Virus record (IMG/VR): IMGVR_UViG_3300028840_002431
Location: 124,001 to 188,000 of that record
DNA length: 64,000 bases
Direction: 5' to 3' (one strand)
Shown here piece after piece: positions 3,796 to 25,682 of this stretch. The position numbers and the translations under genes were made by a program. The notes under the pieces were generated by a model that had not been told where the DNA came from, made no database searches, and saw only the letters and a program-made list of their open reading frames with translations. How positions within the stretch are numbered: the first letter of the stretch is position 1; every line of letters starts with the position of its first letter.

Positions 3796-3838
3796 ACCCT
3801 TGAATACACCGAAATTCCTTCGATTGGTTCCTATGGGT

Positions 3839-4087
3839 ATGAGCTATTCTTACGACCACAGAACCGCCCGCAAGGCCCCCAAGCTGCCCAGAGGGAAATG
3901 GGAGGTCGGGGGTAAAACCGTCGCTAACGAGAAAGCCGCGATCCAAGCGGCTGTCCAACAATCCATGAGCGGGGGTGGTAAGACCGTCAAGATCTACGAA
4001 CAGAGAGATGCGGTCGGCGGTGTGGAAGGCACCCGTGGCTACAGCGTCACAGTTAAAAGTATCTCCAGAAAAGCTCCGAGACGGTGA
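3839..4087 (+). CDS. YSYD-leader protein
   Basis: Starts MSYSYDHRTA. Confidence 0.65.
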   Translation: MSYSYDHRTARKAPKLPRGKWEVGGKTVANEKAAIQAAVQQSMSGGGKTVKIYEQRDAVGGVEGTRGYSVTVKSISRKAPRR

Positions 4088-7660: not shown

Positions 7661-7812
7661 GGTGTCACAAACAGGGGGTGACTAACCCTTGAGGCCCACC
7701 GGTACGAACGCATCAGCGGAAACGTCAAATCGCACGGCCTCGTCAATATATTACACCGCTTGGCGGAATAGGCAATTAGGAGTATCCTCGCTGAGCGGTG
7801 TAATAATACAGG

Positions 7813-10321: not shown

Positions 10322-10618
10322 ATGAGCAACCCCAGGAAAGCTTACGAAGAGGCTATCAAAACCGGCCGTGAGTTGAACTTCAAAATCGTAGAGCACGCGG
10401 CCCGAGCAATAAAAGACTACGCCAAGGACCTGGACACCGCCGCGACCTTCGAGGATCACGCCAAGGTCTATATGACCATGGCTCGCATCTGCGACAACTT
10501 GGAATCAGCGGCCAAGGCGTCATCCGTGAGCGAGAAACCAGCCCGCCTTTTGGCCAACGCCAGCGCTACCCTTGATGCGTTGGCCAAGCTGCGTAAAAGG
10601 GAAGAAGGCATCCTATGA
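10322..10618 (+). CDS. NPRKA-leader protein
   Basis: Starts MSNPRKAYEEA; AGGAG RBS. Confidence 0.7.
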   Translation: MSNPRKAYEEAIKTGRELNFKIVEHAARAIKDYAKDLDTAATFEDHAKVYMTMARICDNLESAAKASSVSEKPARLLANASATLDALAKLRKREEGIL

Positions 10619-10902
10619 GTAACCCCAGGAAAGCGTTCGAAGAGGCTGTCACCCGTGAAGCGTTCATGGCCGGGGTTGACTGGAACCGGGTACAGAAGAC
10701 TTTTAACGCCATGATGCACGAGGCGATCAACGGTAAGAAACATGCGAAAGAAGGGGTCGAACAGGATGTGCTCTACGACCTCTCGTACATTGCCTGGGGT
10801 TTGAAAGAAGCAGCGAAGCAATTGGATATGGGTTCGTCAGAGCGCCACGCGGACGCTTTGTACAAACAACTCACGCGGGACGCTCAGTCGGCAGGAGAGT
10901 GA
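10615..10902 (+). CDS. NPRKA-leader protein
   Basis: Starts MSNPRKAFEEA. Confidence 0.7.
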   Translation: MSNPRKAFEEAVTREAFMAGVDWNRVQKTFNAMMHEAINGKKHAKEGVEQDVLYDLSYIAWGLKEAAKQLDMGSSERHADALYKQLTRDAQSAGE

Positions 10903-10932
10903 ACGTCTGAGACGGTGTAATTATATAGACCC

Positions 10933-11739
10933 ATGAGGTCCCACCGTCTCAAAGGCGCATCCTTCCAACCTTCGAGTTGCAACGACAAGCTGAGCAAGGT
11001 ATCGCGCAAGCTCCAATACAACGGCCGCTACGCGAGTCACCCAAAGCCTCCTTACGTCTGCTCCACCTACGTATCCATCGAGGCCACGTGTCCCAAGACG
11101 TGCCGGTTCAAGGACACCGGGTGTTATCCTCAGGTCGGGAACGCGGCTTCGTCGGTCCGGTCCCTGGACGAAGACGCCATGTACGAAGGGCTGACTGGCC
11201 CCGACGTGGCCAAGGCAGAGGCCGAGTTAATCAATCAGGCGTGGCCCAAGGGAGTCCCACAGGACGGCGCTCAAGGAGGCCGGGACCTACGGCTCCACGT
11301 GTCAGGAGAGACGGCGGACACCGCGTCGGCCTGGGCGTTGGGTATAGCCGCCAGCCGTTGGAAAGGTCGCGGGGGAGGTGATGTTTGGACCTACACACAC
11401 AACTGGCGGACCATAGAACCATACGACTTCGGCCCCATATCGGCGTTGGCGTCGGTCGAGACCCAAGAAGAGGCGGAAGAAGCCATCGAGCGTGGGTATA
11501 CCCCAGCCATGGTTGTAACAAAGTTCCCGGCAGACAAGGCTTTTCTGATCCCCGGCACGGGTATGAAGGTCGTCCCGTGTCCAGCCCAGATCCGGACATC
11601 CAAATGTATAACGTGCCGTCTGTGCTTCAAGCCGATGCCGAAGGGTAAGCTTATCGGCTTCCAGTTGCACGGGTTCGGGGCAAACAGGATGGTGAAGAAG
11701 CTTCCCACACTGGGCCAGATGACGATGCCTTGGGCTTGA
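10933..11739 (+). CDS. Cys-rich phage protein (Gp88/DUF7227-like, possibly Fe-S binding)
   Basis: TCPxxCxxxxxGCY, RLHVSG, WTYTH, ASVET, CPAQ, CxxCxLC motifs. Confidence 0.6.
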   Translation: MRSHRLKGASFQPSSCNDKLSKVSRKLQYNGRYASHPKPPYVCSTYVSIEATCPKTCRFKDTGCYPQVGNAASSVRSLDEDAMYEGLTGPDVAKAEAELINQAWPKGVPQDGAQGGRDLRLHVSGETADTASAWALGIAASRWKGRGGGDVWTYTHNWRTIEPYDFGPISALASVETQEEAEEAIERGYTPAMVVTKFPADKAFLIPGTGMKVVPCPAQIRTSKCITCRLCFKPMPKGKLIGFQLHGFGANRMVKKLPTLGQMTMPWA

Positions 11740-11757
11740 TCCGGTGTAAGCTAGGGT

Positions 11758-12012
11758 ATGGCGTCCAAACGCTATTCTAGGTGTACCCGGTGCGGCTCCA
11801 AATTTGATAGGTGGTTGGCGTGCTCCCATATCTACTGCCTCGACTGCCAACCACAGAATAGAAACAAGAACCTCTGGGACCACCTCAAAGACGACTGGCA
11901 GAATTACCTGACGTATACCGAAGAGGAACGAGCCAGAGATGTCCTACTAGATGAAGTCCCTACCCCGGACCTAGGTCCGGGGAGCCGTGTCCAGATTTCC
12001 GGTGTAATTTAG
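11758..12012 (+). CDS. Zn-finger protein with internal LWDHL tag
   Basis: Two CxxC pairs, then KNLWDHL. Confidence 0.6.
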   Translation: MASKRYSRCTRCGSKFDRWLACSHIYCLDCQPQNRNKNLWDHLKDDWQNYLTYTEEERARDVLLDEVPTPDLGPGSRVQISGVI

Positions 12013-12015
12013 ACC

Positions 12016-12414
12016 ATGCTGCCGCAAATACATGAACGTATGCACATGAGCAACGCCTACGCTTTCCTGGCGGAACTCTCAAAAGAGGCCACGCGAGAGA
12101 TGGTGGGGTCGAGTAAGTACCCGATCGAGATGACCGGACAGGGGCCAAGTGCCGGGATGCGTCTGGTCGTTTGCTCCGTCAAAGAACTCGACGACTACTG
12201 TTCCTTTTTGAAAGCGTATGTTGACTCCGAGGTAAACGGAGCGGTTCCGTTGGTCAGGTATTACCAGGGGAAACTAGCGTCCCTGCAAACCGAGATTGAC
12301 GAGGCGTTGGAAAAAGAGGACTGGAACAAAGCTTCACACAGGTTGTGGGACCTGCAAACGACCGGCCAACGGCTACAAGAAAACCTCGACAAGCTCTACA
12401 GCGCTCCAGGATAA
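12016..12414 (+). CDS. Hypothetical protein
   Basis: CGGTG-TAATTT upstream. Confidence 0.6.
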   Translation: MLPQIHERMHMSNAYAFLAELSKEATREMVGSSKYPIEMTGQGPSAGMRLVVCSVKELDDYCSFLKAYVDSEVNGAVPLVRYYQGKLASLQTEIDEALEKEDWNKASHRLWDLQTTGQRLQENLDKLYSAPG

Positions 12415-12415
12415 C

Positions 12416-12988
12416 GTGGTCAAAAAGAAGGACATACCGTTTTACCTAACATGCTTCATTGTCGGGGTTAGTGCCCCTCACACATTCAATTACGGTGTGG
12501 AGCACCCATGGAGAGCGATTCTCATCCTGTCCGGAGTCTTATTGATTTATGCCTTGATCGTCTACAGCCGGACGCTGTCAAAACAAGGGTTGGACGAAGA
12601 ACAAAAGTCGGAGGAGGAAACGGAGTCTGAAAACTATGCGACAGGGGAGGGAACCAGACGGGCAATCGATGAAGAATTTATGAGGGTTGCCGACAACACC
12701 TTGGGTCAACTCGCCGCCCTCGCGGAAGCCTCCGGGCGTTCAGAACCACACAGCGCCATCGGACCCACAGGGCCGGTAGGGCACCCAAACTACTCAGGTC
12801 TGGTGCCACTACAAGGTAGCGTTAGTGCCAGGGAATTGGGTTGCATCTGCCCGCACCCGAACGCCGCTGGTATCGGTCAAACCTTACCCAACCCTAGCTG
12901 CCCGATACACGGATCGAAAGAGCCGGAACCAAAACCAGAACCAGAGCCGGAACCAGAGAAAGATCTCTGGGACCATTTAAGAGGCTAA
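12416..12988 (+). CDS. Membrane protein with GCxCP...CPxHG domain and LWDHL tag
   Basis: Two hydrophobic segments; PE repeats; ends KDLWDHLRG. Confidence 0.65.
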   Translation: MVKKKDIPFYLTCFIVGVSAPHTFNYGVEHPWRAILILSGVLLIYALIVYSRTLSKQGLDEEQKSEEETESENYATGEGTRRAIDEEFMRVADNTLGQLAALAEASGRSEPHSAIGPTGPVGHPNYSGLVPLQGSVSARELGCICPHPNAAGIGQTLPNPSCPIHGSKEPEPKPEPEPEPEKDLWDHLRG

Positions 12989-13058
12989 GGCCGCCACCTT
13001 CCGGAGACGACCTCGTAACTCCTTCTACGCAGATGAGCTACCCAAGGATAACACAGAT

Positions 13059-13511
13059 ATGAAGACAAGCGAGCTATACCTAAAAACCAAAGGGTTTTTC
13101 GTCCACTTGTGTAACATTACAGGTATGCCCGTTCCACGTATCAGGGAACCCGAAGCCCCGGATACCTGTGATTTCACGAGCCATGAAGAAGTGCGGCTCA
13201 ACGTCGTGGGAGCCTACAACGTCACACCGGAACGTCACGCTGCCCACGTCTTTGGCCACTACCTGTGCGACCTTCACGAGTGGGGCAATAAAGAAGATCA
13301 CCCGATCTGCGATGAAATAGCTGACGCCATTGCCGACTTGTTAGACGGCCCGGAGGGGAAAGGCAGTTGTCCTTGTGAATGGACAGAACCATGTGACCCA
13401 CGGTGTACGTGTGTCCATCCGGTCTCAAGCGTCGGTTGTAAGCGATGCTGTCGCTACGGGAGTGACGAGCAACGGAAAGCCCAGGCCGAGCACCTAGTTA
13501 AACATGAATAA
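13059..13511 (+). CDS. Cys/His-rich hypothetical protein
   Basis: HxxxHxxxH and multiple Cys pairs. Confidence 0.6.
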   Translation: MKTSELYLKTKGFFVHLCNITGMPVPRIREPEAPDTCDFTSHEEVRLNVVGAYNVTPERHAAHVFGHYLCDLHEWGNKEDHPICDEIADAIADLLDGPEGKGSCPCEWTEPCDPRCTCVHPVSSVGCKRCCRYGSDEQRKAQAEHLVKHE

Positions 13512-13773
13512 AGACGAAGGACCCAAACTATCTGATGACCCTACCCCCGAAGAACTCAGGGCGTGGGTAGAATACTGGACCCGATGCCCGGCGTGTAAGA
13601 GTAAGCTATCGATGGCCGACGCGGCACTGGGGTATTGCTTCTGGTGCGGGGAGAGTCTGGAATGAGCAAAGTAACGCGGGAAGAACAGGAACGCCAGCGA
13701 CGGATGGAGCATATAGAGAAGCTGGCCAACCGGCGTGAAGAGTCCTATAGCTGGTCCAGATACCAGGAACTGA

Positions 13774-14247
13774 CATGGACGTGAAGAGGTGTATACTTCG
13801 GGCGTGAAAAGATCATGGACGTGAAGGTGTTTCAGGACGGCCGACTGCTTAGGGGTCAAGAAGAGGAAGTTGATTATTTACACAGAGATTCATGGACGTG
13901 AAGATAGAGCTTCATTTCGCCTTACAGATCATGGACGTGAAGGGAGTCCAGGTCCATCGAGATTACTGCCTTAAACAGAGTCGTCCGGGGATAAACGGGT
14001 TGACTTCACATCCCGAAAGCGAGCAAGACTACGGTCACTCGCTAAACTCCCCACGTGGGGAGAGTCCATGATCGAACCGGACGACTCTGTTTAGGGTAGT
14101 AAGAGCAGATCATGGATGTGAAGATCGGGATGACAACCGTAAGAGGGCCAACAGATCATGGGCGTGAAGAAAGACATAGGAATAGGGCCACACGAGATCA
14201 TGGGCGTGAAGGGTAACTTGATAAACTAACAAATCATGGGCGTGAAG
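13774..14247 (+). repeat. CRISPR-like repeat-spacer array, 8 x AGATCATGG[A/G][C/T]GTGAAG, no cas genes in window
   Basis: Copies at 13774-13786 (partial), 13810-13826, 13886-13903, 13926-13942, 14107-14123, 14153-14169, 14195-14211, 14231-14247; non-identical spacers of 23, 59, 22, 29, 25 and 19 bp. Confidence 0.85.
13963..14102 (+). ncRNA. Structured anti-repeat RNA embedded in the array
   Basis: 26-bp closing stem (13963-13988/14077-14102, two G-U), cUACGg tetraloop, split anti-repeat CTTCAC (14004-14009) + GTCCATGATC (14064-14073). Confidence 0.75.
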
Positions 14248-14281
14248 GGGTTACGAGGTTGGTAACTGTTAACAGTTTCGA

Positions 14282-14515
14282 GTGAGGGACCCGGCGATCG
14301 ACTGGACCAAGATCAAGGAACGACAGGACAATAGTCCTGAATGCCGCGACCACGAGGGCGTCTACCGACTGCTCAGCGGGCATCTGTATTACGACAGAGC
14401 GGGCAACCGGTCCCGTATCCTTAGCTTCTGTCTGGATGACCCGGAGCAAGGACCGGTTGTTATCGTGCCGATATTCCCGATCGGGGTAACGCTCTGGGAC
14501 TGTCTGACGACCTAA
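14282..14515 (+). CDS. Small protein with variant tag (TLWDCL)
   Basis: Ends VTLWDCLTT. Confidence 0.55.
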   Translation: MRDPAIDWTKIKERQDNSPECRDHEGVYRLLSGHLYYDRAGNRSRILSFCLDDPEQGPVVIVPIFPIGVTLWDCLTT

Positions 14516-14953
14516 CCCTTCTTGTCGTTCCGAGACAGTAGGATTCAGACCCACACGCCTACGAACGTTGGCGATGGGAATCCTTCCCTATAAAACCCGG
14601 TTTGTGCGGCAAACACGGCCACCATGGCCGTAAAGGCCGTTGTGGAACAACGAACAAACCGATCTCACTAAACACGCTCCGCTATCCCCGTCAACGTGGA
14701 TACGCAATAACCCTTCTGAAGCTTCTAGAGTAGCGTTTTCGCAGAAGAATACGCAGAAGAAAGATATAACCGAGCGATTCGATCGAACCCAAAGCAATGC
14801 AATCCGCCAATATGGTATTTATAGAACGCTTAAACACTTGCAACGACTCAAAGGAGCGTCCTATAGAGTTTAAATGCTGAGAGGTCGAACCAAAGCCGTG
14901 CAAAGCAATCGGTCCAACCTCTCGATTAACCACCCAACAGAAAGGTGATAACC

Positions 14954-15742
14954 ATGAAGGAAGATACCACCCAACCCGCTGTAGATCAAGACGAAGACGC
15001 TACAGAGAGCCAAGACGCCGCTGAAGAACAAAGCACCCCCGGCACCAAGAAGGTGCGCCATCAAGTGCTCAGTCTCCCGGAAGCTGTCGCGGCCATAAAG
15101 CTGCTAGTCAACTCGGGAGGGCCAGACTACAGCCTACAGGACGCTGCCGGTACTCTCGGGGGCAGTATCAATTCCGGCACCAACAAACAGAGGATGGCCA
15201 CCCTCGTGAGGTTCGGTTTTCTCGAAAGGTTGAAGGGGGGTGGTTGGAGGCTCACGAATAAGGGGCGCGTCGTCGCTGAGCGGCCTAACACCCCGGAGTT
15301 TTTCCACATTTGCCAAGAGGCTTTCGAAAAGGCCCCCCACTTCTCTGATATCGGCGCTCGTTTTAGCTGCCGTAAATACGGAGAGGACAACATGCTGCTT
15401 AGGAACTTTGTCCGTATTGACCTCAAGGTTCCTACTAAGAAGACCGTCTCCAAGATCGTCAATACGTACCTGGACTCCCGCAGGTTCTTGGACGGGCTTG
15501 GGGCCGAGCCTGAACACGCCGAAGAGCCAGAACAGCCACGCGAAACTCAAAGCGTGCCGGACGAAACCCCCCTTGTCCCATCCAACGGGAGCCACGCCGT
15601 GTTCCAAGCGGTGGTGGACGGCGCTGTCATAAAGAAGACAGCCGAGACCAAGGACGACCTCCCTCGCTCCGTTCACACCTTCATAGAAATGCTGCGTCTG
15701 GAATTCGCTGACGAACTGAGGGCGTACGCCGAGAGGGCGTAG
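14954..15742 (+). CDS. Winged-helix DNA-binding protein (DUF5343-like)
   Basis: SLPEAV...AAGTLG...NSG...MATLVRFGFLE...WRLTNKGR wHTH pattern. Confidence 0.55.
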   Translation: MKEDTTQPAVDQDEDATESQDAAEEQSTPGTKKVRHQVLSLPEAVAAIKLLVNSGGPDYSLQDAAGTLGGSINSGTNKQRMATLVRFGFLERLKGGGWRLTNKGRVVAERPNTPEFFHICQEAFEKAPHFSDIGARFSCRKYGEDNMLLRNFVRIDLKVPTKKTVSKIVNTYLDSRRFLDGLGAEPEHAEEPEQPRETQSVPDETPLVPSNGSHAVFQAVVDGAVIKKTAETKDDLPRSVHTFIEMLRLEFADELRAYAERA

Positions 15743-15758
15743 CCATTCTAACACGGTT

Positions 15759-15787
15759 CGACCCACCCGGTTGTTTCGGGTGGGTCG
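15759..15787. terminator. Perfect 11-bp hairpin, probable terminator
   Basis: CGACCCACCCG-gttgttt-CGGGTGGGTCG just after a stop codon. Confidence 0.5.
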
Positions 15788-15840
15788 TCGCGTACGCGAT
15801 CGGTGTACGAAATCCAGAAGCCTTGCGCACCGGAGGGAGA

Positions 15841-16356
15841 ATGCCTATTCCAAAGCCAAAGGACACGATCCTCACAGAAGAACAATGGGAGTCGGTTCGT
15901 CGTTTGTCTACTTTAGAACAGGAGATTGCCAGGGACTACTACCGTAACGATTTAACTCAAGCCCAGATAGGGCTACGGCATGGCATGACGCAAGCGGCAG
16001 TATCGACCCGACTGTCAAAAATTAACGAACGTTTGGAGTGGGTACAGCACCTGCCGCCCATACCCACAAGCGACCTCACAGAATTGCTAACGCCCGAATT
16101 CAATTCTTCCACACCGATACTGACAACCTTGTACGAAACGACGTGCCAAAGTGAAACGGCTGTCAGGATGGGTTGCTCGCAGGGGAAAGTCCGGCACCAA
16201 CTCCACAAGGCGGTGGACAAACTCGAAACCCTCGTTGAATCAGGCCGCACTGACCTCGAAGAGGTGCTACGAGGGTTGAGAACGATCCGAGATAGGGACG
16301 GAACACTCCACACCTTCGACCACCCGTCGAGGCGAGTTGATGAAATAAACCCTTAG
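15841..16356 (+). CDS. Sigma-70 region-4-like tandem HTH protein
   Basis: LSTLEQEI...LTQAQIGLRHGMTQAAVSTRL and a second HTH QSETAVRMGCSQGKVRHQL. Confidence 0.7.
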   Translation: MPIPKPKDTILTEEQWESVRRLSTLEQEIARDYYRNDLTQAQIGLRHGMTQAAVSTRLSKINERLEWVQHLPPIPTSDLTELLTPEFNSSTPILTTLYETTCQSETAVRMGCSQGKVRHQLHKAVDKLETLVESGRTDLEEVLRGLRTIRDRDGTLHTFDHPSRRVDEINP

Positions 16357-16404
16357 GTTTTACCCCGTAGCCGGTGTAGTATCTGGGTAAGAGGAGGTAA
16401 AGCC

Positions 16405-17733
16405 TTGGGTTCATTTAACGCTACCTGTGCCATATCCGGACTGCCTATCGGGCCAGGAGACCCCGTCCGGTACCTGCTACTGTCCGGAAATTACAGCGAA
16501 AGAGGGCCGGTCTGTATGCCCTTCGATAAGTGGGAACCAAGGACCTTCCCGATCCGGGCCGAGTATAACGACTACGGTTCGATCGAGAACCCCGAAGAGG
16601 GTATCGGCCCTCAGTTATGGCTCGACGGCCTGAAACGGGACCTCGTCCCACAGGGGTGGGGTGATAACAGTTGCCATGACGTGCCGACCGACCCCGACAT
16701 GACGTGGGGCCAATTGTTAGAAGCCCTGTGGGAGGGCCGGGTATTAATCGACCCCAAGAAAGCCAGGGGCATGTCACTCTTGGACCGGGTCCTGGAAGCA
16801 AGCGACAAGATTCTGCTCGAAAAGGCCCGCAAGAAACGGTTGGACCCGGAGGTGCCGGAAGGCGTGCCGACACTGGAACGGATTAAGAACGTCCTGTCAG
16901 GGCACCCGGCGTTCAACGGCTGGGGTAATGACGGCTTCATGGTGGACGAGACCGAACGAGCCGTGGTCCGGGTACGCTGGCACGGCCAGGATCGTATCGA
17001 CCACCTGGAGACGGCCAGAGACCTACTGAACGAAGGCTACGCGGCCCTGTTAGTCTCAGGGAGCGGCAACTATTCCGACGAGGCAGAGGTGTTGGTCTTT
17101 GCCAAACCGGGCGTACGTTGTGGCCGTGGGATGCACCACGAGGCTTATTACGCACCCCGGCCGGTCGCGCCCATGATGATCCGCGAGGACGTGTGGCAAG
17201 CCCTCCTCAAGCTGGACACCGTGGAACGAAGTCTTTGGGGCAGCGAGGAGATGGGTTCCAAAACAGACCGGAGTCTGGGCGCTTACAAGAAAGCGGTCCG
17301 TGATCTGTACGGTCGAAGGCTGAAACAACAAGAGGTCCTCGAAGCTACCGCAAAGAGCGACCTTGAGGTCGCCATCGAGGCCGTGAAAACCAGCGGTGTG
17401 TACCCGAAACCTAATAGCCTGACCCACGCCCTGGAAGATCCGCTGACCCTGAGTTTCGGGTGGGGAGGCCACTGGGAACTGTTAGTTGACAAGGCGCTCC
17501 CCGCCGAAGAGATAAGCGACACCCTCGACGCCGTAGCCGAGTCACTCTACGTGTGTACGGCTCTGATGTGGGTCCGATACCTGTGGCAGCCGTCGCATAC
17601 GGTAGGGCCTCAGTTTGGTTCCTTCAACATGCACGAGGCTTACCACAAGGCCATGGCCCAGATAGCCTACGAACGGCACGAAGAAGACCGAAAGCAGTAC
17701 GAGGACGAGATAGACGAGGAGGACGCGGAGTAA
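16405..17733 (+). CDS. Phage hypothetical protein (MGSFNxTCxxSGL type)
   Basis: 442-aa ORF; GAGGAGG RBS; YNDYG motif. Confidence 0.75.
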   Translation: MGSFNATCAISGLPIGPGDPVRYLLLSGNYSERGPVCMPFDKWEPRTFPIRAEYNDYGSIENPEEGIGPQLWLDGLKRDLVPQGWGDNSCHDVPTDPDMTWGQLLEALWEGRVLIDPKKARGMSLLDRVLEASDKILLEKARKKRLDPEVPEGVPTLERIKNVLSGHPAFNGWGNDGFMVDETERAVVRVRWHGQDRIDHLETARDLLNEGYAALLVSGSGNYSDEAEVLVFAKPGVRCGRGMHHEAYYAPRPVAPMMIREDVWQALLKLDTVERSLWGSEEMGSKTDRSLGAYKKAVRDLYGRRLKQQEVLEATAKSDLEVAIEAVKTSGVYPKPNSLTHALEDPLTLSFGWGGHWELLVDKALPAEEISDTLDAVAESLYVCTALMWVRYLWQPSHTVGPQFGSFNMHEAYHKAMAQIAYERHEEDRKQYEDEIDEEDAE

Positions 17734-18458
17734 TGCTCGACGCAAAACTGAGACACGTCTACGACAACGGGCTTGACTTGGCTTCCTGGGGTGAGGCTAA
17801 CGCTCCTGACGAACGGCTGATTTACCGTAATGGTGTTGACTCCCAGCTTCGTAAAATCGCGGCCGTTGCGACCCTCCTGCACGACTTCGGCGCTTACGAC
17901 TTACCCCCGCTGGTCGTGGGGAGCCACACGAGCAAATCAGTCAAGCTCCCGGTGACGTGCTTCCGGTTCGCGCCCTACGAACAAGTCGAAGCCTACGTCT
18001 TCGTCCGCGACAACTTCCACAACATCAAGGCCGTGGTGGTTTCTGACTCCCCGATCCACATGCCGTATCACGTGGTCCACATGGAGTGGAGTCCGGAACG
18101 GTACGAAGAAGAACTCAAACGCTACAGCAAATACCACGAGAACGACACGCCAGAAGAAGCTCAGAAACGGCGAGTGTTGATGGCCACAGACGACTGGTTC
18201 AAGGATTGGTCCAGTGGAGTCCTTCTGAGAAAGGACGGGCGCATCTACCGGACCGGCAGTTACCAATCCGTGTACTGCGAAGGCATTGATACGCCGCTAA
18301 TGGCCGAAAACGCCGTGTTCAAGCCATACGAGGACGGTGACAAGAGCTTCGTGTGTGAGGTTGATTCTTACACTATCGTTGCGCGGATCTTGGAGCATGT
18401 TATCGACTCCCTCGAACGAGAACGCTACAAGAGGAACCAGGAAAGCTCCGACGCCTAG
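17733..18458 (+). CDS. Hypothetical protein
   Basis: TAATG overlap; VVGSHTSKSVKLPV...VRDNFH motif. Confidence 0.7.
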   Translation: MLDAKLRHVYDNGLDLASWGEANAPDERLIYRNGVDSQLRKIAAVATLLHDFGAYDLPPLVVGSHTSKSVKLPVTCFRFAPYEQVEAYVFVRDNFHNIKAVVVSDSPIHMPYHVVHMEWSPERYEEELKRYSKYHENDTPEEAQKRRVLMATDDWFKDWSSGVLLRKDGRIYRTGSYQSVYCEGIDTPLMAENAVFKPYEDGDKSFVCEVDSYTIVARILEHVIDSLERERYKRNQESSDA

Positions 18459-18481
18459 ACTTTTGATAAGCCAGTAGGGGT

Positions 18482-18958
18482 ATGAACCCCCGAAAAGCAT
18501 TTGTGAACAGTCTGCTAAAAGAAGCCGCCCGGCGAAAGACCGCCAGCACCCCGGCAGAGGACATCGGAGAGGCGATCAGCCTACTCGATTACTTACCGAA
18601 CGCGGCGGCGGCTTGGCACGAGGCCCACGCGAAAAACCGAGAACTCGCCAAGGCGAACGCCAAGAAGGTTCGACAAGCCGTTGACCTTCTCAGCAATGTT
18701 CTCTCTTCCATGCCAAAGTCCATGCAATATATGGTCGTCGGCCTCGACAACAAGACCTATACCTTCAAGGACGTGGATGACCTCATCGAGGAACTGAAAT
18801 CCCGTGGCATCCGTCATACAGGGTTTCAGGAGGGGAGGCACCTCAGGCCGGAACTGCAAGGGCAGCCGAAGTTCGACAAGCTTCTAGGTCCCATGCATGG
18901 CGGTGGTGGTAAGGTTCGATACGAGACCCAGAAAGTCTACGACGTGCTGAGTCGCTGA
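18482..18958 (+). CDS. NPRKA-leader protein
   Basis: Starts MNPRKAFVNSLLKEA. Confidence 0.7.
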   Translation: MNPRKAFVNSLLKEAARRKTASTPAEDIGEAISLLDYLPNAAAAWHEAHAKNRELAKANAKKVRQAVDLLSNVLSSMPKSMQYMVVGLDNKTYTFKDVDDLIEELKSRGIRHTGFQEGRHLRPELQGQPKFDKLLGPMHGGGGKVRYETQKVYDVLSR

Positions 18959-18976
18959 TCTGGTGTAACCCAAGGC

Positions 18977-19417
18977 ATGACGACAGAAGAAGAAACACCC
19001 ACGATAGCCTGTGATTTCGACGGGGTCCTCAATTCTTACACTTCGGGATGGACCGGGGACACGCTACCCGACCCACCTGTGCCGGGGGCCATCGAGTGGC
19101 TCGAAGACGTCACCAACGAGTGTGACGTTATCATCCACACAGCGCGGATCAAGGAAAGCCAGCCGGGGCAGACAGAACTAATCAAGGCGTGGTTGTTAGA
19201 ACACGGGTTGTCTCCGGAAGCCCTGGCCCGGCTCTCGTTCGAGGGTAAGGTTACGGCTACCATCTACCTGGACGACCGGGGTGTTAGATTCACCGGGGAA
19301 AACTTCCCGACGGCCGAAGAAGTCAAGAACCACAAGGCGTGGAATAAACAAGGGAAGCGGGCCAAGGAAATCAAGAAGGCGTGGGACGACCTGGACGACC
19401 GCTGGAAGTGCAGATGA
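18977..19417 (+). CDS. HAD-superfamily phosphatase/nucleotidase
   Basis: DFDGV motif I, HTAR motif II, YLDDR motif IV. Confidence 0.8.
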   Translation: MTTEEETPTIACDFDGVLNSYTSGWTGDTLPDPPVPGAIEWLEDVTNECDVIIHTARIKESQPGQTELIKAWLLEHGLSPEALARLSFEGKVTATIYLDDRGVRFTGENFPTAEEVKNHKAWNKQGKRAKEIKKAWDDLDDRWKCR

Positions 19418-19643
19418 CAATACCTAACAACTTACGTCAGATGACCGAAGACCAGTTGTGGCAAAGGCTCAAGGACATCGAAGCCGAACAAGGGTATATC
19501 CGGGAGGAAATCCGGAGACGGCTCGACGAACAGCACCCAATTCTATCCCCGGCCATACGGGAAGCGACCCGCAAAGCTCTCTCTACTTAAAGCCATAAAC
19601 GGTGTAGCCTGTACCCGGACCCAAAATATTTCCGGGTAAGCCG

Positions 19644-20162
19644 ATGGCAGAAAAGTTCCTAGATGTGGTAGGCGCGGTAGGAGACGACTGGTCCGACCGG
19701 GAGCCGGACGCCCTGTGTCGTTGCGACCACGAGCTACAAGAGCACGGGCCTTACGGAGGCGCGTGTACGCGATGCCCGTGCGAGGCGTTTGGAACCATTG
19801 GGCCGATTCCGAAGTATATAAGGGAGATGACCATAGAGACGCTGGGAGACCCCCTCACGATAAAGGAGGCGGACGAGACCGGCGACAAACTGGGCTACTT
19901 CGACGAACGGAACGGTGAGATACGGGTAAACAAGAACCAGCCTTGGGTCGGCAAAAACATCGTCCTGCTACATGAATTGTTACACGTGGTAGATATCATG
20001 CTCGTGCAGAGCGGAGCCAAAAAGAGACGAATGAACCACGGGGAATTACACAACCTCGCGCCAAACCTGTTGGCCGTCCTGGTCGCCGCTGGCCTGTGGA
20101 AGCTCGATGTCACCATGGAAGAGGTCACGGAGTTCTGGGAAGCCCAGGAGCCAGAGGAATGA
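19644..20162 (+). CDS. HEXXH zinc metallopeptidase-like protein
   Basis: LGYF...IRVN...VLLHELLH. Confidence 0.6.
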   Translation: MAEKFLDVVGAVGDDWSDREPDALCRCDHELQEHGPYGGACTRCPCEAFGTIGPIPKYIREMTIETLGDPLTIKEADETGDKLGYFDERNGEIRVNKNQPWVGKNIVLLHELLHVVDIMLVQSGAKKRRMNHGELHNLAPNLLAVLVAAGLWKLDVTMEEVTEFWEAQEPEE

Positions 20163-20661
20163 GCCTACCGCGTGGACGAGTCATCGTAGTTGATAAAAAG
20201 CCCTACGAGTGGTTGGTGAAGCCACTGTCGAAGGACCGGTACGGCCTCAAGTGGACAGCGCCCTCGCTGTCACTGACCATAAAGCCGGAAGGCGAGAAGG
20301 TGGTCCAGTACCTGTGTCGCTCGAAACACTGGACCGACGCGCACGAGGAGTGTTACTTCGACGACCCGTCGCTCCACGCGGTGGAGCCACACAAGGTAGC
20401 CTTTGGCCCAACGGAGGTTAAAGAGGTTATCCAGGGGAACATGGAGTTAGAAGATTGGACCGTGGCTCTTTCCGCAAAACAACGGAAGTCAAAAAGTTGA
20501 CACCCCTTGAGAAATATCTGCAACTGTGCCGACAACTGAGCAAGGTCAAAACGTCGGACGAGGAACGCCGTGTTGTAGAGTATATGGACTATTGGTGGGA
20601 ACGGATGTCAGAAGTTGATAAGATAGAGGCGTCCATCCGAGAAGAAGCTCTGTGCTACTAA

Positions 20662-22408
20662 ATGGCCTACCAGTACACATACACGGTTTATGACAGTTTC
20701 CCGAACCGTAAGGTCGATGTCACTTTATTGACGTTCGAGATCGACGCTTCGTCGATTGTCCCGACGGTCGAGCAAGTCACGCTCATCAAGCACATCAACC
20801 GTCCTGACGCTTGTCGTATCCAGTTTAACAACCCTCTCCTTAGTCAGGAGGAGGCCGTGCTCGAAGGTGTTATAGCGTCGCACGAGGGGGAGGCGAAACG
20901 CGAACCCCAAGAGAGCACACCACCGACGCCAAAGACTTTGTGGGATCATCTGACTGACAACGGCTGACTTCGGTGTAAGATAGGGTGTGTACATACGCGA
21001 CGACTACGATCGTGAAGAACCCATGACCGTGGAGGAATATTATGACTCCATGTCTGTCGAGGAATATTACGCGAACGAGACGCTCCTCAACGATGTCCTT
21101 TTCAAACGTAACCTGTGGGAGCACCTGAGAGACAGGTCCTTTCTACGACATGAAGGTGTTCAGAGCAAAATTCACCACCGATGACGGGAAGTGGCATATA
21201 CCGGGGAACAAGAGACGAAGGACCTCCTGGAGATACTCGCTATGCGGCATACACCTCTACGACCCCACAGAGTGTCAGGAGACCGACGACGACAAATTAT
21301 CAAGTTCGGAAGTCTGCGTTCTCTGTAAGGAACGCCATGGCGGGGTCGAAGAGGACAGGAACCTCTGGGATTATCTGACCACCTAGGAAACGCCCGATGT
21401 GGAGACAGTTCTTACAAAAGAAGTGCCCAGCCGATAACTACCATTGGAAGTGGGACCGGCTGTGCTTCTGTCACGGAGGCAGGATATTGGATCTCAAGAC
21501 CGGCGTGGAATATCGTCGGCACGTGAACCGGACCGACGCCAAGGCAGCCATGTTCGGGCTGTTGTATGGGGCCAGCCCGAACGCGAATGGCGATAGCTTC
21601 TCCAACCTCGAACAACGGTTGCTGGCCCAACGGAGCCGGGTTCCGCCGATCCACCGGGACATCTTCCCACGGAGGGTTAGCTTTCTGGACAACGATACGC
21701 GGTTCATCGGGCCGGACGACGAGGCCGAAGAAGCCGTCCTCGAAGTGGTTGAAAAGCAAGAGGCCGAGAAACGAGCCAAGGAACCGGGTAAGGACCTCTG
21801 GGACCACTTGAAGGGAAGTAAAGAATGACGGTCTGTCCTGACATAGAAACAATCGACAGGCGTATAGTGGAGAAGATCCAGAGCCTGAAGGACGACTCGA
21901 AGCTTCACGGTTGGTCCTTACATAGGGCCTGTGTGGCCCACGGGCTAATCGAAGCGCTATGGGTTGTACGCGGTTACGAGGATGTGCCGGAAGAGGTCGG
22001 TGTGCCATCGCCCCTGGACTTCGAAGGAGACGCTTCAAGACGGCTACAGGTCTAATGTCCCCGCTGCCGCTGACATGCCGGATCTGCGGGAAAACTTGCC
22101 CCACTGAGTTGGAGAGCTTTTCGTACCCCATTATCAACGTGTGTTCAGAATCTTGTGCCGATGTGTTCGAGGAAAGTGAGGGCTGGCGGCCTGGATCAAA
22201 ACCCGCCCGTTTTAGAATGACCCTCTGGAGCTATCTGAGAAGCGAAGACTGTGGGCACGGGAACACCTACGTGGTCCGGGACTCGTCAGATTTTATGAAA
22301 CGGGCGGTCAAACACGAGGTTTGCCGGGACTGCGAACACCTGATTATTACAGTCGATGGGGAGGTCCGCCACGTGTTGTCGAAGCGCAACGAGCGTGACG
22401 TGGCTTAA
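20662..22408 (+). other. Cluster of LWDH-tagged small ORFs (20662-20967, 20987-21184, 21150-21386, 21397-21828, 22055-22408) plus untagged 21825-22055
   Basis: Tags TLWDHL, NLWEHL, NLWDYL, DLWDHL, TLWSYL. Confidence 0.7.
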
Positions 22409-22726
22409 TTATCTGTTAGCAAATTCGTTATAATCTTGCAGCATCTCTAGCGCTTGGGCGGAAAGCTTCTCGGCCTCCTGCACCTTTTCTATGATGTCTT
22501 TTCGCCGCTGTTTCATCTCACGGTTATGTTGTCGAGTTTCAGCGGTGTCGTCGAGTGCGGGAGGGTTGTCCAGGAACGTCACGAAAGCGTGCGGCTTCGA
22601 CATCGACCTGCCCAATTCGTAAAGATTCTCGGAAGCTGCAACCAGAAGGTTCGACCACTTGAGCGCATCCCGGCCCCATCCGGCTTGGCGTAAAGATCGC
22701 TCGAAAGCTTTTCTCGGATTGCCCAT
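22409..22726 (-). CDS. NPRKA-leader protein
   Basis: Starts MGNPRKAFERSLRQA. Confidence 0.7.
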   Translation of the reverse strand: MGNPRKAFERSLRQAGWGRDALKWSNLLVAASENLYELGRSMSKPHAFVTFLDNPPALDDTAETRQHNREMKQRRKDIIEKVQEAEKLSAQALEMLQDYNEFANR

Positions 22727-22783
22727 ATCCCAGAGAGTGTATAAATATAAACGACCAATTTTTCCTTATGACCACGCTGGGAT

Positions 22784-23059
22784 ATGGACGACGCTACCCG
22801 TTGGAAGACATCCGCGCTCCCGCCTGGAGCCAGCCCCAGCGCTTCGGCTGAAAAAGCCGCGAGAGCGCTGCAAGAAGGATTGAACCATCTCGACGAGACC
22901 ATCGAGAATTTCGAGGTGGTTCGTAGTAACCTGGGTTGGAGAGATCTCGACCCGCTCCTCAAGAAGGCCCACGGGATTGTCGAATTATTACACAAGGCGG
23001 GGCGGGAAGGCATTGAGCTATCAAACGAACTCAAAAGAGCCGTCCGCAAGTTACGGTGA
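22784..23059 (+). CDS. Hypothetical helical protein
   Basis: T-rich TAT motif upstream. Confidence 0.55.
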   Translation: MDDATRWKTSALPPGASPSASAEKAARALQEGLNHLDETIENFEVVRSNLGWRDLDPLLKKAHGIVELLHKAGREGIELSNELKRAVRKLR

Positions 23060-23064
23060 ACCAT

Positions 23065-23691
23065 ATGCCTTATAGTTATGACAACCGGAAGCGGAACGCG
23101 GCGGGAAAATCTTGGGGTGAGGCGATCGGCAAGTTCGAGAAGACCTTCCGCAACCTTCTGACAGACGATGTCCCACGCGCCCTCGCGCCCAAGGTCGAAA
23201 AGGCTCTCAAGGAGTTACAAAAGGACCTGGGGCCGAACTGGGAGTATGTCAGGAGCACCCCAAAGGAAATCGCCGGAAAGCTTCTGAGGAACGTCCTCGA
23301 TGCCGTGGTCAACAGTGACTCCGACTTCTCCTGGGCGTTGGACAACACCATTGCGAACTACCTGCCCCTGGAGCAGATGGACCTTGGGGACCTGACCGAG
23401 GAACTGGAACCGGTCATGGAGAAGGAACTCAAGGACTTTCTCCGCAAACACGTACGTGGCGCGACCGTGACCAAAGAAGACACCTGGGCCGGGAGAATCA
23501 CCTTCCGCGTCAAGTTCCCCGAAGACGCCAAACCCTCAAGGGATGTCGATGAGGACGTGGAACAAGCCCTACGCCCTGCAATAGCCGCGTGGTGTAAGAA
23601 GAAGGACATCCCTGCGGGCATGGCCAGGGCGAGCCTGACCTTCTCTGATCCGAATACCGCGAACGGCATGGTTATCGACATAGAACTGTAG
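23065..23691 (+). CDS. YSYD-leader protein
   Basis: Starts MPYSYDNRKRNAA. Confidence 0.7.
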   Translation: MPYSYDNRKRNAAGKSWGEAIGKFEKTFRNLLTDDVPRALAPKVEKALKELQKDLGPNWEYVRSTPKEIAGKLLRNVLDAVVNSDSDFSWALDNTIANYLPLEQMDLGDLTEELEPVMEKELKDFLRKHVRGATVTKEDTWAGRITFRVKFPEDAKPSRDVDEDVEQALRPAIAAWCKKKDIPAGMARASLTFSDPNTANGMVIDIEL

Positions 23692-23703
23692 AAAAGACGA
23701 CCT

Positions 23704-23913
23704 ATGAGCAACAAAGTCACATTGGTGGGCGACGCCGTCGAGGTAGTCGAGAGGCTGAAAGAGTCAACGGGCCAGAGCACAAGCGGTGTTATCAGGGACG
23801 CCCTTGGATTCTACGACTTCGCACGGGTCCAGGCAGAGGAGGGGAAGCAAATATGTACCCTCCGGGACGGGGAGCCAGTGGCAGAGGTCGTCACCCGTTT
23901 CAGGCGGAAATAG
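23704..23913 (+). CDS. Ribbon-helix-helix (CopG-like) protein
   Basis: Beta strand, then ERLKESTGQSTSGVIRDAL. Confidence 0.5.
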   Translation: MSNKVTLVGDAVEVVERLKESTGQSTSGVIRDALGFYDFARVQAEEGKQICTLRDGEPVAEVVTRFRRK

Positions 23914-24023
23914 GGCCGTTTTTTCTTATGGCGTCGCTGGGGTATGATTACAGGGCTGGCCAAGGCTTTTGACCGGTTCTGCAACGATCACACGCTCTCG
24001 ACGGGCGTTTGATGGAGAACAAC

Positions 24024-24332
24024 ATGTCTAATCCGAGAAAAGCCTTTGAGCAAAGCCTACGCACAGCGACCAACGTTGATATCACCGATGTGGACGCTGT
24101 GTTAGAAAGGTTGAGTCAACTCATAAACGTTGGTTACGAAAACGTCAACGAGGGTTGGCTGCTTGCCAAACAGTTCAAAGACGAACACAAGGGACTTCGC
24201 CGCGAACAAATGTGGCAAGAACGGTCTGAGATTCGAGAAGTGGCCGACGATATCGAGGATATTCAGGCGATACTCTTCAAAGCCGACCAGCTATTACATA
24301 AAGCCCACGTGAAAATCTCAAGAGCAGGGTAA
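24024..24332 (+). CDS. NPRKA-leader protein
   Basis: Starts MSNPRKAFEQSLRTA; GGAG RBS. Confidence 0.7.
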   Translation: MSNPRKAFEQSLRTATNVDITDVDAVLERLSQLINVGYENVNEGWLLAKQFKDEHKGLRREQMWQERSEIREVADDIEDIQAILFKADQLLHKAHVKISRAG

Positions 24333-25193: not shown

Positions 25194-25682
25194 GTGGGCT
25201 ACTCATACGACCATCGCAAGAGGACAGCCGGACACTTCCACGAGACCGTCCGTGGCCAGGGGTACACAGAACAAGAGGCCCTACGGGACGCCCTGAGCGA
25301 AAACGTGACCGGGTTTGCCGACGAAGAGTACCGAGAGGTCCTCAAGTCGAAGCGATTGCGTGCCCCAAAGCCTCCACGCCGGGTCAAGATCGAGAAACAG
25401 AAGCTCCAAAGAGGTAAGGTCGAAAGGGCCTTCGTCCTGGAAACACGTTGGATGTCCCAGTTGGAGAGGAATCCGGGTCTCGCCGGGGACCGTCAATACC
25501 AGGAGCGCTACAAGACCCAAGGTGCGGCCCTGAAAGCCGCCAAGGAGGTCGCGCTCAAATACGACGTGGAGCTAAATATCTACTTGGCTGCCTTCTGCCA
25601 GGGCGACACACATCTGGCGACCGTGACACCCGAAGCCGGAAAACCGGGCGTGTGGGAGTTCGTGATAGATTTCCACGCCTAA
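25194..25682 (+). CDS. YSYD-leader protein
   Basis: Starts (G/M)GYSYDHRKRTA with a GTG start codon. Confidence 0.7.
   Translation: MGYSYDHRKRTAGHFHETVRGQGYTEQEALRDALSENVTGFADEEYREVLKSKRLRAPKPPRRVKIEKQKLQRGKVERAFVLETRWMSQLERNPGLAGDRQYQERYKTQGAALKAAKEVALKYDVELNIYLAAFCQGDTHLATVTPEAGKPGVWEFVIDFHA

What the first reader, a model, noticed from the sequence alone, without database searches (positions are those of the whole stretch)
10322..24332. Third terminal tag: N-terminal M[SG]NPRKA[FY]E in five small helical proteins
Seen in 10322-10618, 10615-10902, 18482-18958, 22409-22726 (minus) and 24024-24332. Codons differ between copies and the downstream bodies are not obviously alignable. The leader is usually followed by an (R/K)-x-A site (REA, KEA/KTA, RQA, RTA). 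Inference: a cleavable capsid-targeting leader for proteins injected with the DNA, which would make these candidate anti-defence or host-takeover effectors.
Basis: partly seen in the sequence, partly recalled or inferred. Interest (0 to 1): 0.65.

Follow-up and report, generated by a model that had tools for sequence, protein, structure and literature searches.

The report
Portable N-terminal tag, jumbo phage
Five small genes of an uncultured 416-kb phage begin with the same 12-residue peptide, one of several interchangeable end-tags carried by roughly one in seven of the phage's proteins; these are most likely address labels read by a shared machine, either the phage's own ClpX unfoldase or the assembling capsid.

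Summary
All five ORFs begin M(S/G)NPRKA(F/Y). NPRKA[FY] occurs six times in the six-frame translation of the 416.5-kb phage genome, each time directly after a start Met. Looser matches bring the total to 9, plus 2 degenerate copies. A related 398-kb phage has 13. Codons vary freely and the bodies are unrelated.

The tag is one of at least four N-terminal tag families (A: NPRKAFE; B: YSYDRR; C: DxxRWKT; D: RVxxR[YF]). A C-terminal LWDHL family also exists. Homologous bodies carry different tags in different phages, so the tags are interchangeable modules. Tag A is a lineage-specific derivative of the clade-wide tag D.

Neither the capsid destination nor cleavage at (R/K)xA is shown. Some tagged genes lie in virion modules: next to the head-to-tail adaptor gene and downstream of the capsid gene. 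However, the phage also encodes its own ClpX (zinc-finger N-domain, GYVG, IGF loop) and no ClpP. D-tagged genes flank clpX, and tag D is enriched only in clpX-positive relatives. Its core resembles the SspB peptide that binds the ClpX N-domain.

Verdict: a portable docking or recognition peptide. The receptor is most likely phage ClpX (~0.4). T4-like capsid targeting is the main rival (~0.3).

The parts
10322..10618 (+). T1, 98 aa, tag A variant (..NPRKAYEEAI..); the tag is encoded at about 10322-10363
   Evidence: ORF and N-terminus. Its stop overlaps the T2 start (ATGA). Its body is homologous (E 1e-10) to an internal module of G001 protein h153317 in the clpX locus. There the module is preceded by a tag-D sequence instead.
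10615..10902 (+). T2, 95 aa, tag A (MSNPRKAFEEAV..)
   Evidence: 25.4 bits. Apart from itself, it has no relative of comparable length among 5.8 billion proteins. No Pfam or PHROG family.
18482..18958 (+). T3, 158 aa, tag A variant with V in place of E (MNPRKAFVNSL..)
   Evidence: 22.7 bits. It lies in the operon that follows the promoter-like motif at 16373.
22409..22726 (-). T4, 105 aa, tag A (MGNPRKAFERSL..)
   Evidence: 23.2 bits. It is divergent from a tag-C gene at 22784.
24024..24332 (+). T5, 102 aa, tag A (MSNPRKAFEQSL..)
   Evidence: 24.6 bits.
22784..23059 (+). 91-aa gene with N-terminal tag C (MDDATRWKT..)
   Evidence: It belongs to the same local cluster of tagged genes.
23056..23691 (+). 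211-aa gene with N-terminal tag B (..YSYDNRKR..)
   Evidence: No Pfam family.
25194..25682 (+). 162-aa gene with N-terminal tag B (MGYSYDHRKR..)
   Evidence: No Pfam family.
3800..4087 (+). 95-aa ORF with tag B after an internal Met (..MGMSYSYDHRT..)
1..643 (+). 219-aa gene (starts 16 nt before the window) with N-terminal tag D (..LTLRVAARFA..)
7797..7804 (+). Promoter-like motif (C)CGGTGTA(A/G)TAT, 16 nt before an ATG. It heads the run of + strand genes that ends with T1 and T2.
   Evidence: There are 61 copies in the genome, many lying 15-19 nt before a start codon. Only two fall in the structural blocks (at 10.7 and 53.3 kb). Further window copies are at 10914, 12001 and 16373.
16373..16380 (+). 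The same promoter-like motif, heading the operon that contains T3

Best explanation
The M(x)NPRKAFE.AL leader is a portable docking or recognition peptide. It is a lineage-specific allele of a family of interchangeable N-terminal tags used by a clade of 350-530-kb uncultured phages. Its job is to hand otherwise unrelated proteins to one shared machine.

The most likely receptor is the phage's own ClpX unfoldase. ClpX would bind the tag through its zinc-finger N-domain and/or pore. Working with host ClpP (the phage has none), it would then unfold, remodel or degrade the tagged protein, or whatever that protein holds.

Shown:
- The tag is selected at the protein level.
- It sits at the extreme N-terminus.
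- It is modular and swaps with tags B and D on homologous bodies.
- It derives from tag D.
- The phage ClpX has an N-domain, a GYVG pore loop and an IGF loop.
- Tag-D genes flank clpX, and tag D is enriched only in clpX-positive relatives.

Inferred:
- That tag A, like D, binds ClpX.
- What happens after binding (timed turnover of the tagged protein, or adaptor-like delivery of a bound target).
For: 1. Terminal, portable and under protein-level selection. All 6 exact and 22 strong copies are next to Met. Synonymous codons vary freely.

2. Interchangeable tags.
- One conserved Cys-containing domain, encoded just upstream of the adaptor gene, carries tag A in G000 and G001. It carries tag D in 7 loci and tag B in 4 loci, at the same position.
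- The T1 body carries tag A here and tag D in G001.
- Three further ortholog pairs have swapped tags.
- ClpX is known to read several unrelated motif classes at either terminus (PMC5415555). That fits four N-terminal families plus one C-terminal family.

3. The phage encodes ClpX. Pfam finds zf-C4_ClpX, AAA_2 and ClpB_D2-small. GYVG is at residue 153 and IGF at 272. No ClpP is found, although the control genomes ring.

4. clpX is present in 15 of 18 clade genomes (the window's own genome; the others). A strict tag-D pattern gives 72 hits against 6 control hits in those 15. It gives 1 against 2 in the 3 complete genomes without clpX.

5. In 9 of 15 clpX-positive genomes a strict tag-D hit lies within 2.5 kb of clpX on the same strand. 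ORF maps show D-tagged neighbours in 5 of 6 loci, and they are different proteins in different genomes.

6. The core of tag D, (L)RV(A/V), resembles the SspB XB peptide ...ALRVVK. That peptide binds the ClpX N-domain, the same site used by phage proteins lambda O and MuA (PMC3983244).

7. T1-T3 lie in operons behind a promoter-like motif that occurs only twice (at 10.7 and 53.3 kb) in the structural blocks. Co-expression of T1-T3 with head genes is therefore not indicated.
Against: - No binding or degradation has been tested.
- The similarity to XB is short and holds for tag D. Tag A (PRKAFE) is further from it.
- The clpX/tag-D co-occurrence may be a single evolutionary event, because the three clpX-negative genomes are the most distant relatives. 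One of them still has a degenerate tag-like N-terminus.
- Many tagged genes lie in virion modules. These are upstream of the adaptor gene, downstream of the capsid gene, and at 385-387 kb. ClpX does not predict this.
- The C-terminal LWDHL family is confined to two genomes and does not follow clpX.
- The tag is predicted to be helical, whereas classical degrons are extended.
Confidence: 0.4

Rival explanations
1. T4-like capsid-targeting sequence. The leader binds a prohead core or shell component, so tagged proteins are enclosed during head assembly. The head maturation protease then removes the leader, and the mature proteins are injected with the DNA.
For: - T4 internal proteins and Alt share a 10-20-residue N-terminal CTS on otherwise diverged bodies. 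The CTS is portable (PMC9026906; PMC5694885).
- SPN3US gp53 and gp54 share an identical 15-residue N-terminus containing AXE, although the proteins are only 34% identical overall.
- Tag A contains A-(F/Y)-E in 20 of 21 copies. That matches the A/S/G-x-E type of site.
- In the complete relative G003, tag A occurs only in the locus just upstream of the head-to-tail adaptor gene. That locus holds 8 of the 13 G001 copies. It also encodes a K/E-rich 636/1013-aa protein in which tags sit between modules like processing sites.
- Genes carrying tags B, C and D fill the variable island directly downstream of the capsid gene.
- A head maturation protease (phrog_18299) and an acidic scaffold-like protein are present.
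- The bodies evolve fast. Only 16 of 44 tagged proteins have a G001 body homolog.
Against: - Tags B, C and D substitute for tag A but lack any Glu-type site. The variant in locus L072 has Q in place of E.
- The capsid, scaffold, portal and protease proteins carry no tag.
- No T4 gp21-family match was found, although the control did not ring either.
- T1-T3 lie in operons behind a promoter-like motif found only twice in the structural blocks.
- The island downstream of the capsid gene holds unrelated genes in other clade members, so adjacency may be incidental.
- This reading does not explain the association of tags with clpX.
Confidence: 0.3
2. The tag is a docking helix for some other shared partner. 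Candidates include a neck or portal-proximal assembly, a decoration site on the capsid exterior, or a phage-built compartment. Alternatively it is a self-association helix. No unfoldase or head interior would be involved.
For: - The ancestral locus of tag A abuts the adaptor-like gene. Its helical half matches phage portal adaptors at Z 9-10.6. A phrog_240 'head protein' gene is nearby.
- The tag is modelled as a short amphipathic helix set apart from the body.
- Multi-tag proteins could act as multivalent linkers.
Against: - Enzymes such as a type IB topoisomerase, an SprT-like protease and DUF5662 carry tags of the same family. That does not suit external decoration.
- No candidate receptor has been identified.
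- This reading does not explain why the tags must sit at the extreme terminus.
Confidence: 0.17
3. Ordinary paralogs. One small helical family has diverged beyond recognition except at its N-terminal helix, and the tag has no targeting role.
For: - All five proteins are small and rich in helix formers.
- T1 and T2 are tandem, translationally coupled genes.
Against: - The bodies show no similarity, and lengths range from 57 to 513 aa.
- Several bodies have their own distinct conserved domains and orthologs.
- The same body carries different tags in different phages.
- The tag occurs inside large proteins.
Confidence: 0.05
4. A nucleic-acid-level element at gene starts (translation enhancer, RNA processing site or recombination site) that happens to be translated.
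For: The motif begins at the start codon.
Against: - Every degenerate position varies among synonymous codons.
- The upstream sequence is not conserved.
- Internal in-frame copies exist.
- The backwards control pattern gives 0 hits, against 7, 10 and 5 hits for the real pattern in the three genomes searched.
Confidence: 0.02

Closest known systems
ClpX recognition and tethering signals (N- and C-terminal motif classes; the SspB XB peptide ...ALRVVK; the lambda O and MuA signals that bind the ClpX N-domain)
   Same: - Short, portable signals at the extreme termini.
- Several unrelated sequence classes are read by one machine (PMC5415555).
- Tag D shares the (L)RV(V/A) core with XB.
- A complete ClpX with an N-domain is encoded by the phage.
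   Different: - Here the ClpX is viral and has no ClpP partner gene.
- The tags are sharply conserved words carried by about 44 N-tagged proteins per genome.
- Tag A itself (PRKAFE.AL) has no counterpart among described signals.
- Binding is untested.
Phage T4 capsid targeting sequence (CTS) of IPI, IPII, IPIII and Alt
   Same: - A leader of about 10 residues directly after Met.
- It is shared by otherwise unrelated, fast-evolving small proteins.
- It is portable (PMC9026906).
   Different: - T4 has one CTS type, ending in the gp21 site.
- Here at least four interchangeable tags exist, and only one has a Glu-type site.
- No gp21-family protease was detected.
- Many tagged genes are outside late modules.
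Giant phage SPN3US/phiKZ head-protein propeptides (for example the identical 15-residue N-termini of gp53 and gp54; the AXE and SXE sites)
   Same: - A conserved N-terminal peptide on diverged paralogs in a jumbo phage.
- A-x-E lies within the peptide (PMC5694885).
   Different: - Most of those propeptides are 80-130 residues long and belong to recognisable paralog families with proven virion location.
- Here the bodies are unrelated and their location is unknown.
Encapsulin cargo-loading peptides and N-terminal trafficking modules of polymorphic toxins (from general knowledge, not tested here)
   Same: The logic is a short or modular terminal address joined to a variable cargo. The encapsulin shell has the HK97 fold, as this phage's capsid protein family presumably does.
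   Different: There is no sequence similarity. A complex prediction with the capsid protein gave no verdict.

Membership tests
ClpX recognition/tethering signal | A cognate ClpX with a substrate/adaptor-binding N-domain, a pore loop and a ClpP-docking loop is present | tested here: met
   The gene at genome 296503-297768(-) matches zf-C4_ClpX, AAA_2 and ClpB_D2-small. GYVG is at residue 153 and IGF at 272. There is no phage ClpP.
ClpX recognition/tethering signal | The signal is short, portable and located at a protein terminus | tested here: met
   All 22 strong copies follow a Met, most of them at the ORF's likely start. The tags swap between homologous bodies.
ClpX recognition/tethering signal | Sequence resemblance to a known ClpX-binding motif | tested here: inconclusive
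   The tag D core (L)RV(A/V) compares with XB ...ALRVVK. Tag A aligns with tag D (RVAFEEAL against RIAFRYQEA), but it is further from XB.
ClpX recognition/tethering signal | Tags and ClpX co-occur and are linked in the genome | tested here: met
   The strict pattern gives 72 hits against 6 control hits in 15 clpX-positive genomes. It gives 1 against 2 in 3 clpX-negative genomes. D-tagged neighbours of clpX are shown. This is not phylogenetically independent. It was tested for tag D, not tag A.
ClpX recognition/tethering signal | Physical binding to ClpX and ClpX-dependent unfolding or degradation | not testable with these tools
Biochemistry is needed.
T4-type capsid targeting sequence | A 10-20-residue N-terminal peptide shared by unrelated proteins | tested here: met
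T4-type capsid targeting sequence | The peptide ends in the prohead protease cleavage motif, which is also used in the core head proteins | tested here: inconclusive
   A-(F/Y)-E is present in 20 of 21 tag A copies. It is absent from the interchangeable tags B, C and D. No tag-like site occurs in the capsid, scaffold, portal or protease proteins.
T4-type capsid targeting sequence | A gp21-family (Peptidase_S77) prohead protease | tested here: inconclusive
   PF03420 gave no match, but the control genomes did not ring either. A different 'head maturation protease' (phrog_18299) is present. Its family was not resolved.
T4-type capsid targeting sequence | Tagged proteins are in the virion with the leader removed | not testable with these tools
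   The phage is uncultured, from sediment and seawater metagenomes, and no RNA or proteome data are available.
Ordinary paralog family | Similarity extends over the whole protein | tested here: not met
   Among the six exact-motif proteins the best body-to-body blastp E-value is 0.27. Lengths of the 21 tagged ORFs range from 57 to 513 aa. Distinct body orthologs are shown.
Sec/Tat signal peptide | A hydrophobic core after a basic N-region (and a twin arginine for Tat) | tested here: not met
   The tag and the following 20 residues are charged and amphipathic, with no hydrophobic stretch (sequences).

The most novel reading that the evidence does not exclude
The small, fast-evolving tagged proteins are a programmable degradation arsenal. 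Each variable body grips a different host protein, for example a defence factor. The conserved tag tethers the pair to the phage-encoded ClpX, which feeds the captive to the host's own ClpP. This would be a viral, adaptor-based targeted-proteolysis system with dozens of interchangeable adaptors per genome.
Probability: 0.12. Interest if true: 0.9.

Novelty: new variant of a known kind. Interest (0 to 1): 0.68.

Why it matters
Roughly 90 of about 620 predicted proteins in this phage carry a short conserved word at one end. About 44 carry an N-terminal tag from four families, and about 45 carry the C-terminal LWDHL tag. The words are swapped between homologous proteins like cassettes. That is a protein-sorting code on a scale not described for any phage.

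If the reader of the code is the phage's own ClpX, this would be the first case of a virus bringing both an unfoldase and a matching tag set. It could use them to control the lifetime of its own proteins, or of captured host proteins.

Either way the tags give a cheap sequence handle for picking out the accessory effectors of an uncultured jumbo-phage clade that has hundreds of members in sediments and water.

Tried and rejected
- Family scans of all nine tag-A proteins (Pfam, PHROGs) found nothing above noise.
- A word-index search with T2 against 5.8 billion proteins found only T2 itself.
- A megablast of window 10000-25000 and a tblastn of a neighbouring 487-aa protein against GenBank phages found no match.
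- A tag DNA pattern search of 596 Gb of prokaryote genomes gave 4 hits. All are chance (short or out-of-context ORFs), so there is no host N-terminus being mimicked.
- Complex prediction of the capsid protein, two pieces of the acidic scaffold-like protein and T2 gave no verdict (scores 0.10, 0.49, 0.00). This is not evidence either way.
- I first took the 305-aa conserved gene next to the tag locus for the capsid protein. The fold says otherwise: an Ig-like N-domain plus an adaptor-like helical half. The real capsid gene is at genome 12804-13682.
- I first took the K/E-rich multi-tag protein for the scaffold. A better scaffold candidate, acidic and Q-rich, sits between the protease and capsid genes.
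- The structure model of the tag plus conserved Cys domain was too weak (pLDDT 62) for a fold search.
- The protease family could not be resolved by Pfam or by PDB sequence search.
- A search for a late-promoter motif upstream of structural genes found nothing convincing.
- No RNA runs hold this phage.
- An Atlas look-up of the ClpX-adjacent tagged protein and of the 305-aa protein gave no named relative.
- A literature search for the tag strings found nothing relevant.

Full report
**What the sequence is**

The window is bases 124001-188000 of a single 416,539-bp IMG/VR virus contig with 55% GC. It is a tailed jumbo phage. It has baseplate and tail-fibre proteins, a family-A DNA polymerase, helicases and an NAD ligase. 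It also has a large terminase, a portal, a head maturation protease and a major head protein. It comes from sediment and seawater metagenomes, and no RNA runs hold it.

The contig is circularly permuted relative to a complete relative, G001 (398 kb, terminal repeats, 48% GC), which I fetched whole. Median identity of shared proteins is 65%.

The phage belongs to a large uncultured clade. The capsid protein has 581 relatives in IMG/VR, and the best 80 are at least 91% identical. Another structural protein has 169 relatives at 50-85% identity.

**The observation**

All five ORFs are there and start with the motif. NPRKA[FY] occurs six times in the six-frame translation of the genome, always 0-1 residue after a start Met. 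The sixth copy is at genome 401339(-).

A 14-residue HMM separates 22 strong copies from everything else: 9 in this genome and 13 in G001. The consensus is N-P-R-K-A-F-E-x-A-L-x-K-x-A.

Selection acts on the protein. Pro uses four codons, Arg five and Ala four. Third positions at identical residues agree only 36% of the time within this genome. Upstream DNA is not conserved.

The bodies do not align and match no family. T2 has no relative among 5.8 billion proteins. The pattern is at chance level in 596 Gb of prokaryote genomes. In IMG/VR the seven-residue pattern with an ATG two codons upstream occurs only in G001 and in a near-identical fragment of this phage. Further relatives with slightly different copies turned up later in the neighbourhood scan.

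**The tag is one member of a larger system**

A comparison of the first 32 residues of every ORF in both genomes shows at least four N-terminal tag families on otherwise unrelated proteins:
- A: NPRKAFE
- B: (M)YSYD(R/H)R
- C: MDxxRWK(T/V)
- D: a basic amphipathic R(V/I)(V/A)xR(Y/F), 3-22 residues from the start

Each family is strongly concentrated in the first 30 residues. The counts for this genome are A 10 of 11, B 10 of 12, C 9 of 11 and D 15 of 23, although that zone holds 15% of all residues.

About 44 proteins in this genome are N-tagged, and only 16 of them have a body homolog in G001. A C-terminal LWDHL tag, also selected at the protein level, marks about 48 further small proteins here and 54 in G001. 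It is essentially confined to these two genomes.

Tagged proteins include enzymes: a type IB topoisomerase (D), an SprT-like protease (B) and a DUF5662 protein (D).

**The tags are interchangeable**

The clearest case is a Cys-containing domain of about 110 residues that is always encoded immediately upstream of one conserved 305-aa gene. At the same position in the alignment, the domain is preceded by:
- tag A in this phage and G001;
- tag D in seven other loci;
- tag B in four others.

In that alignment RVAFEEAL lines up with RVAHRY and RIAFRYQEA. Tag A therefore looks like a local derivative of tag D.

The body of T1 (window 10322) is homologous to an internal module of a G001 protein. There the module follows ..SVVRRYEEQ.. 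rather than ..NPRKAYEEA... Three more ortholog pairs carry different tags in the two genomes: D against B, D against C, and C against a longer leader.

In the complete relative G003, the R-x-A-F-[EQ]-x-A word occurs only in the locus upstream of the 305-aa gene. Tag A therefore arose there and spread to scattered genes, including the five in the window, in the lineage of this phage and G001.

The tag also occurs internally. A 636-aa K/E-rich protein here has tag-A-like and tag-B-like words between its modules, and so does its 1013-aa counterpart in G001. In G001, two further tagged genes are fused in frame behind other tagged genes.

These facts exclude ordinary paralogy and a nucleic-acid-level element.

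**Where the tagged genes lie**

The helical half of the 305-aa protein matches phage head-to-tail adaptors (Z 9-10.6, a dozen of the top thirty rows). Its N-terminal half is Ig-like. The ancestral tag-A locus therefore lies in a virion module, near a phrog_240 'head protein' gene.

Genes carrying tags B, C and D also fill the island directly downstream of the capsid gene. In other clade members that island holds unrelated genes.

Against this, T1-T3 sit in operons headed by (C)CGGTGTA(A/G)TAT, which commonly lies 15-19 nt before the first ATG. This motif has 61 copies in the genome, and only two of them (at 10.7 and 53.3 kb) fall in the two structural blocks. The canonical head proteins carry no tag.

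The T4 CTS and the shared N-termini of SPN3US gp53 and gp54 are true precedents. Tag A contains A-(F/Y)-E, the kind of site those proteases cut. But tags B, C and D substitute for A and have no such site. The variant in locus L072 has Gln there. No gp21-family protease was detected, although that search was uninformative. A complex prediction with the capsid protein and scaffold pieces gave no verdict.

**A second receptor**

The phage encodes a complete ClpX. It has the C4 zinc-finger N-domain, the AAA+ module, a GYVG pore loop and an IGF loop for docking on ClpP. It encodes no ClpP.

ClpX reads short signals at either end of proteins, in several unrelated classes. Its N-domain binds adaptors and phage proteins such as lambda O and MuA (PMC5415555; PMC3983244). 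The SspB tethering peptide ends ...ALRVVK, which is close to the (L)RV(A/V) core of tag D.

clpX is flanked by D-tagged genes in five of six loci inspected, and these are different proteins in different genomes.

Across 18 clade genomes, 15 have clpX (the window's own; the rest). In those 15 a strict tag-D pattern gives 72 hits against 6 control hits. In 9 of the 15, one hit lies within 2.5 kb of clpX. The three complete genomes without clpX give 1 hit against 2.

Caveats:
- Those three are the most distant relatives, so this may be a single evolutionary event.
- One of the three keeps a degenerate tag-like N-terminus.
- The link is shown for tag D and extended to tag A through their homology and interchangeability.

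**Verdict**

With high confidence, the motif is a portable N-terminal docking or recognition peptide. It is one allele of a clade-wide set of interchangeable terminal tags.

Which machine reads it is not settled. I rank phage ClpX first (about 0.4), because three independent kinds of evidence point to it: a dedicated unfoldase without a protease partner, gene linkage with phyletic co-occurrence, and motif resemblance. T4-like capsid targeting comes second (about 0.3), because part of the tagged gene set is embedded in virion modules. Another docking partner (about 0.17), ordinary paralogy (0.05) and an RNA or DNA element (0.02) follow.

No alternative genetic code was used.

Noticed in passing
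window 9700-56300 (e.g. 20938-20952, 21796-21810, 24685-24698); genome-wide: A C-terminal tag (K/R)(T/N/D)LWDHL(K/R)(D/E) lies 1-9 residues before the stop of about 48 small proteins, many with CxxC pairs. G001 has 54. Codons follow each genome's GC content, so selection acts on the protein. The tag is essentially confined to this phage and G001: 36 and 29 pattern hits, against 0-2 in 16 other clade genomes.
   Followed up: partly
window 1-643, 3800-4087, 22784-23059, 23056-23691, 25194-25682; genome-wide: There are three further N-terminal tag families, each on 9-19 unrelated proteins per genome and each concentrated in the first 30 residues. They are B (YSYD(R/H)R), C (MDxxRWKT) and D (RVxxR[YF]). 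Orthologs in the two genomes can carry different tags.
   Followed up: yes
genome 296503-297768(-) = L013:8503-9765:-: The phage encodes ClpX (zinc-finger N-domain, GYVG, IGF loop), and no ClpP is found in the genome. clpX is present in 15 of 18 clade genomes. In two relatives (G014, G021) the N-domain and the AAA module lie about 1 kb apart in one open frame of roughly 780 aa. This could be an insertion, possibly an intein.
   Followed up: partly
window 7797, 10914, 12001, 16373, 44948, 50307, 51212, 54787, 57514 (+ strand) and others: A promoter-like motif, (C)CGGTGTA(A/G)TAT, has 61 copies in the genome. Many lie 15-19 nt before an ATG, which would give leaderless or nearly leaderless mRNAs. 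Only two copies (at 10.7 and 53.3 kb) fall in the two structural blocks (about 298-416 kb and 1-62 kb).
   Followed up: partly
genome 12804-13682(-) = L001:12804-13679:-: The major head protein (phrog_2522) is 99.3% identical in protein but only 85.8% identical in DNA between this phage and G001. Of 125 differences, 113 are at third codon positions. It is at least 91% identical in the 80 best clade members, while other structural proteins fall to 50-70%. This is unusually strong purifying selection.
   Followed up: partly
genome 393674-394759(-) = L018:5674-6756:-: An actin-like protein of the Volactin family (PF25216, E 1e-71) is encoded inside the virion gene block. It is 85% identical in G001.
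   Followed up: no
genome 401336-403246(-) and G001 268949-271990(-); clpX-adjacent genes in G001 and G005; loci L069, L070, L072: A second repeated word, FP(S/T)xEA(R/L)xxYLxEHPxADPxxHTV(K)K, often follows tag D. It occurs three times in the 1013-aa multi-tag protein of G001. Its meaning is unknown.
   Followed up: no
genome 285850-287094(-) = L012:17850-19091:-: A type IB (eukaryotic/poxvirus-like) topoisomerase (PF01028, E 4.5e-24) carries N-terminal tag D. In G001 the homologous part lies inside a 955-aa protein that also starts with tag D.
   Followed up: no
genome 400021-400941(-) = L018:12021-12938:-: A conserved 305-aa protein has an Ig/macroglobulin-like N-domain and a helical half that matches phage head-to-tail adaptors (Z 9-10.6). 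It is probably the neck adaptor of this clade.
   Followed up: partly
genome 1-5700 and 415183-416539: The contig ends fall inside a giant gene, which is 2267 aa in G001. The first 5.7 kb consist of short Pro/Val/Gly-rich repeats that are open on both strands. The contig is a circular permutation broken in this repeat.
   Followed up: no
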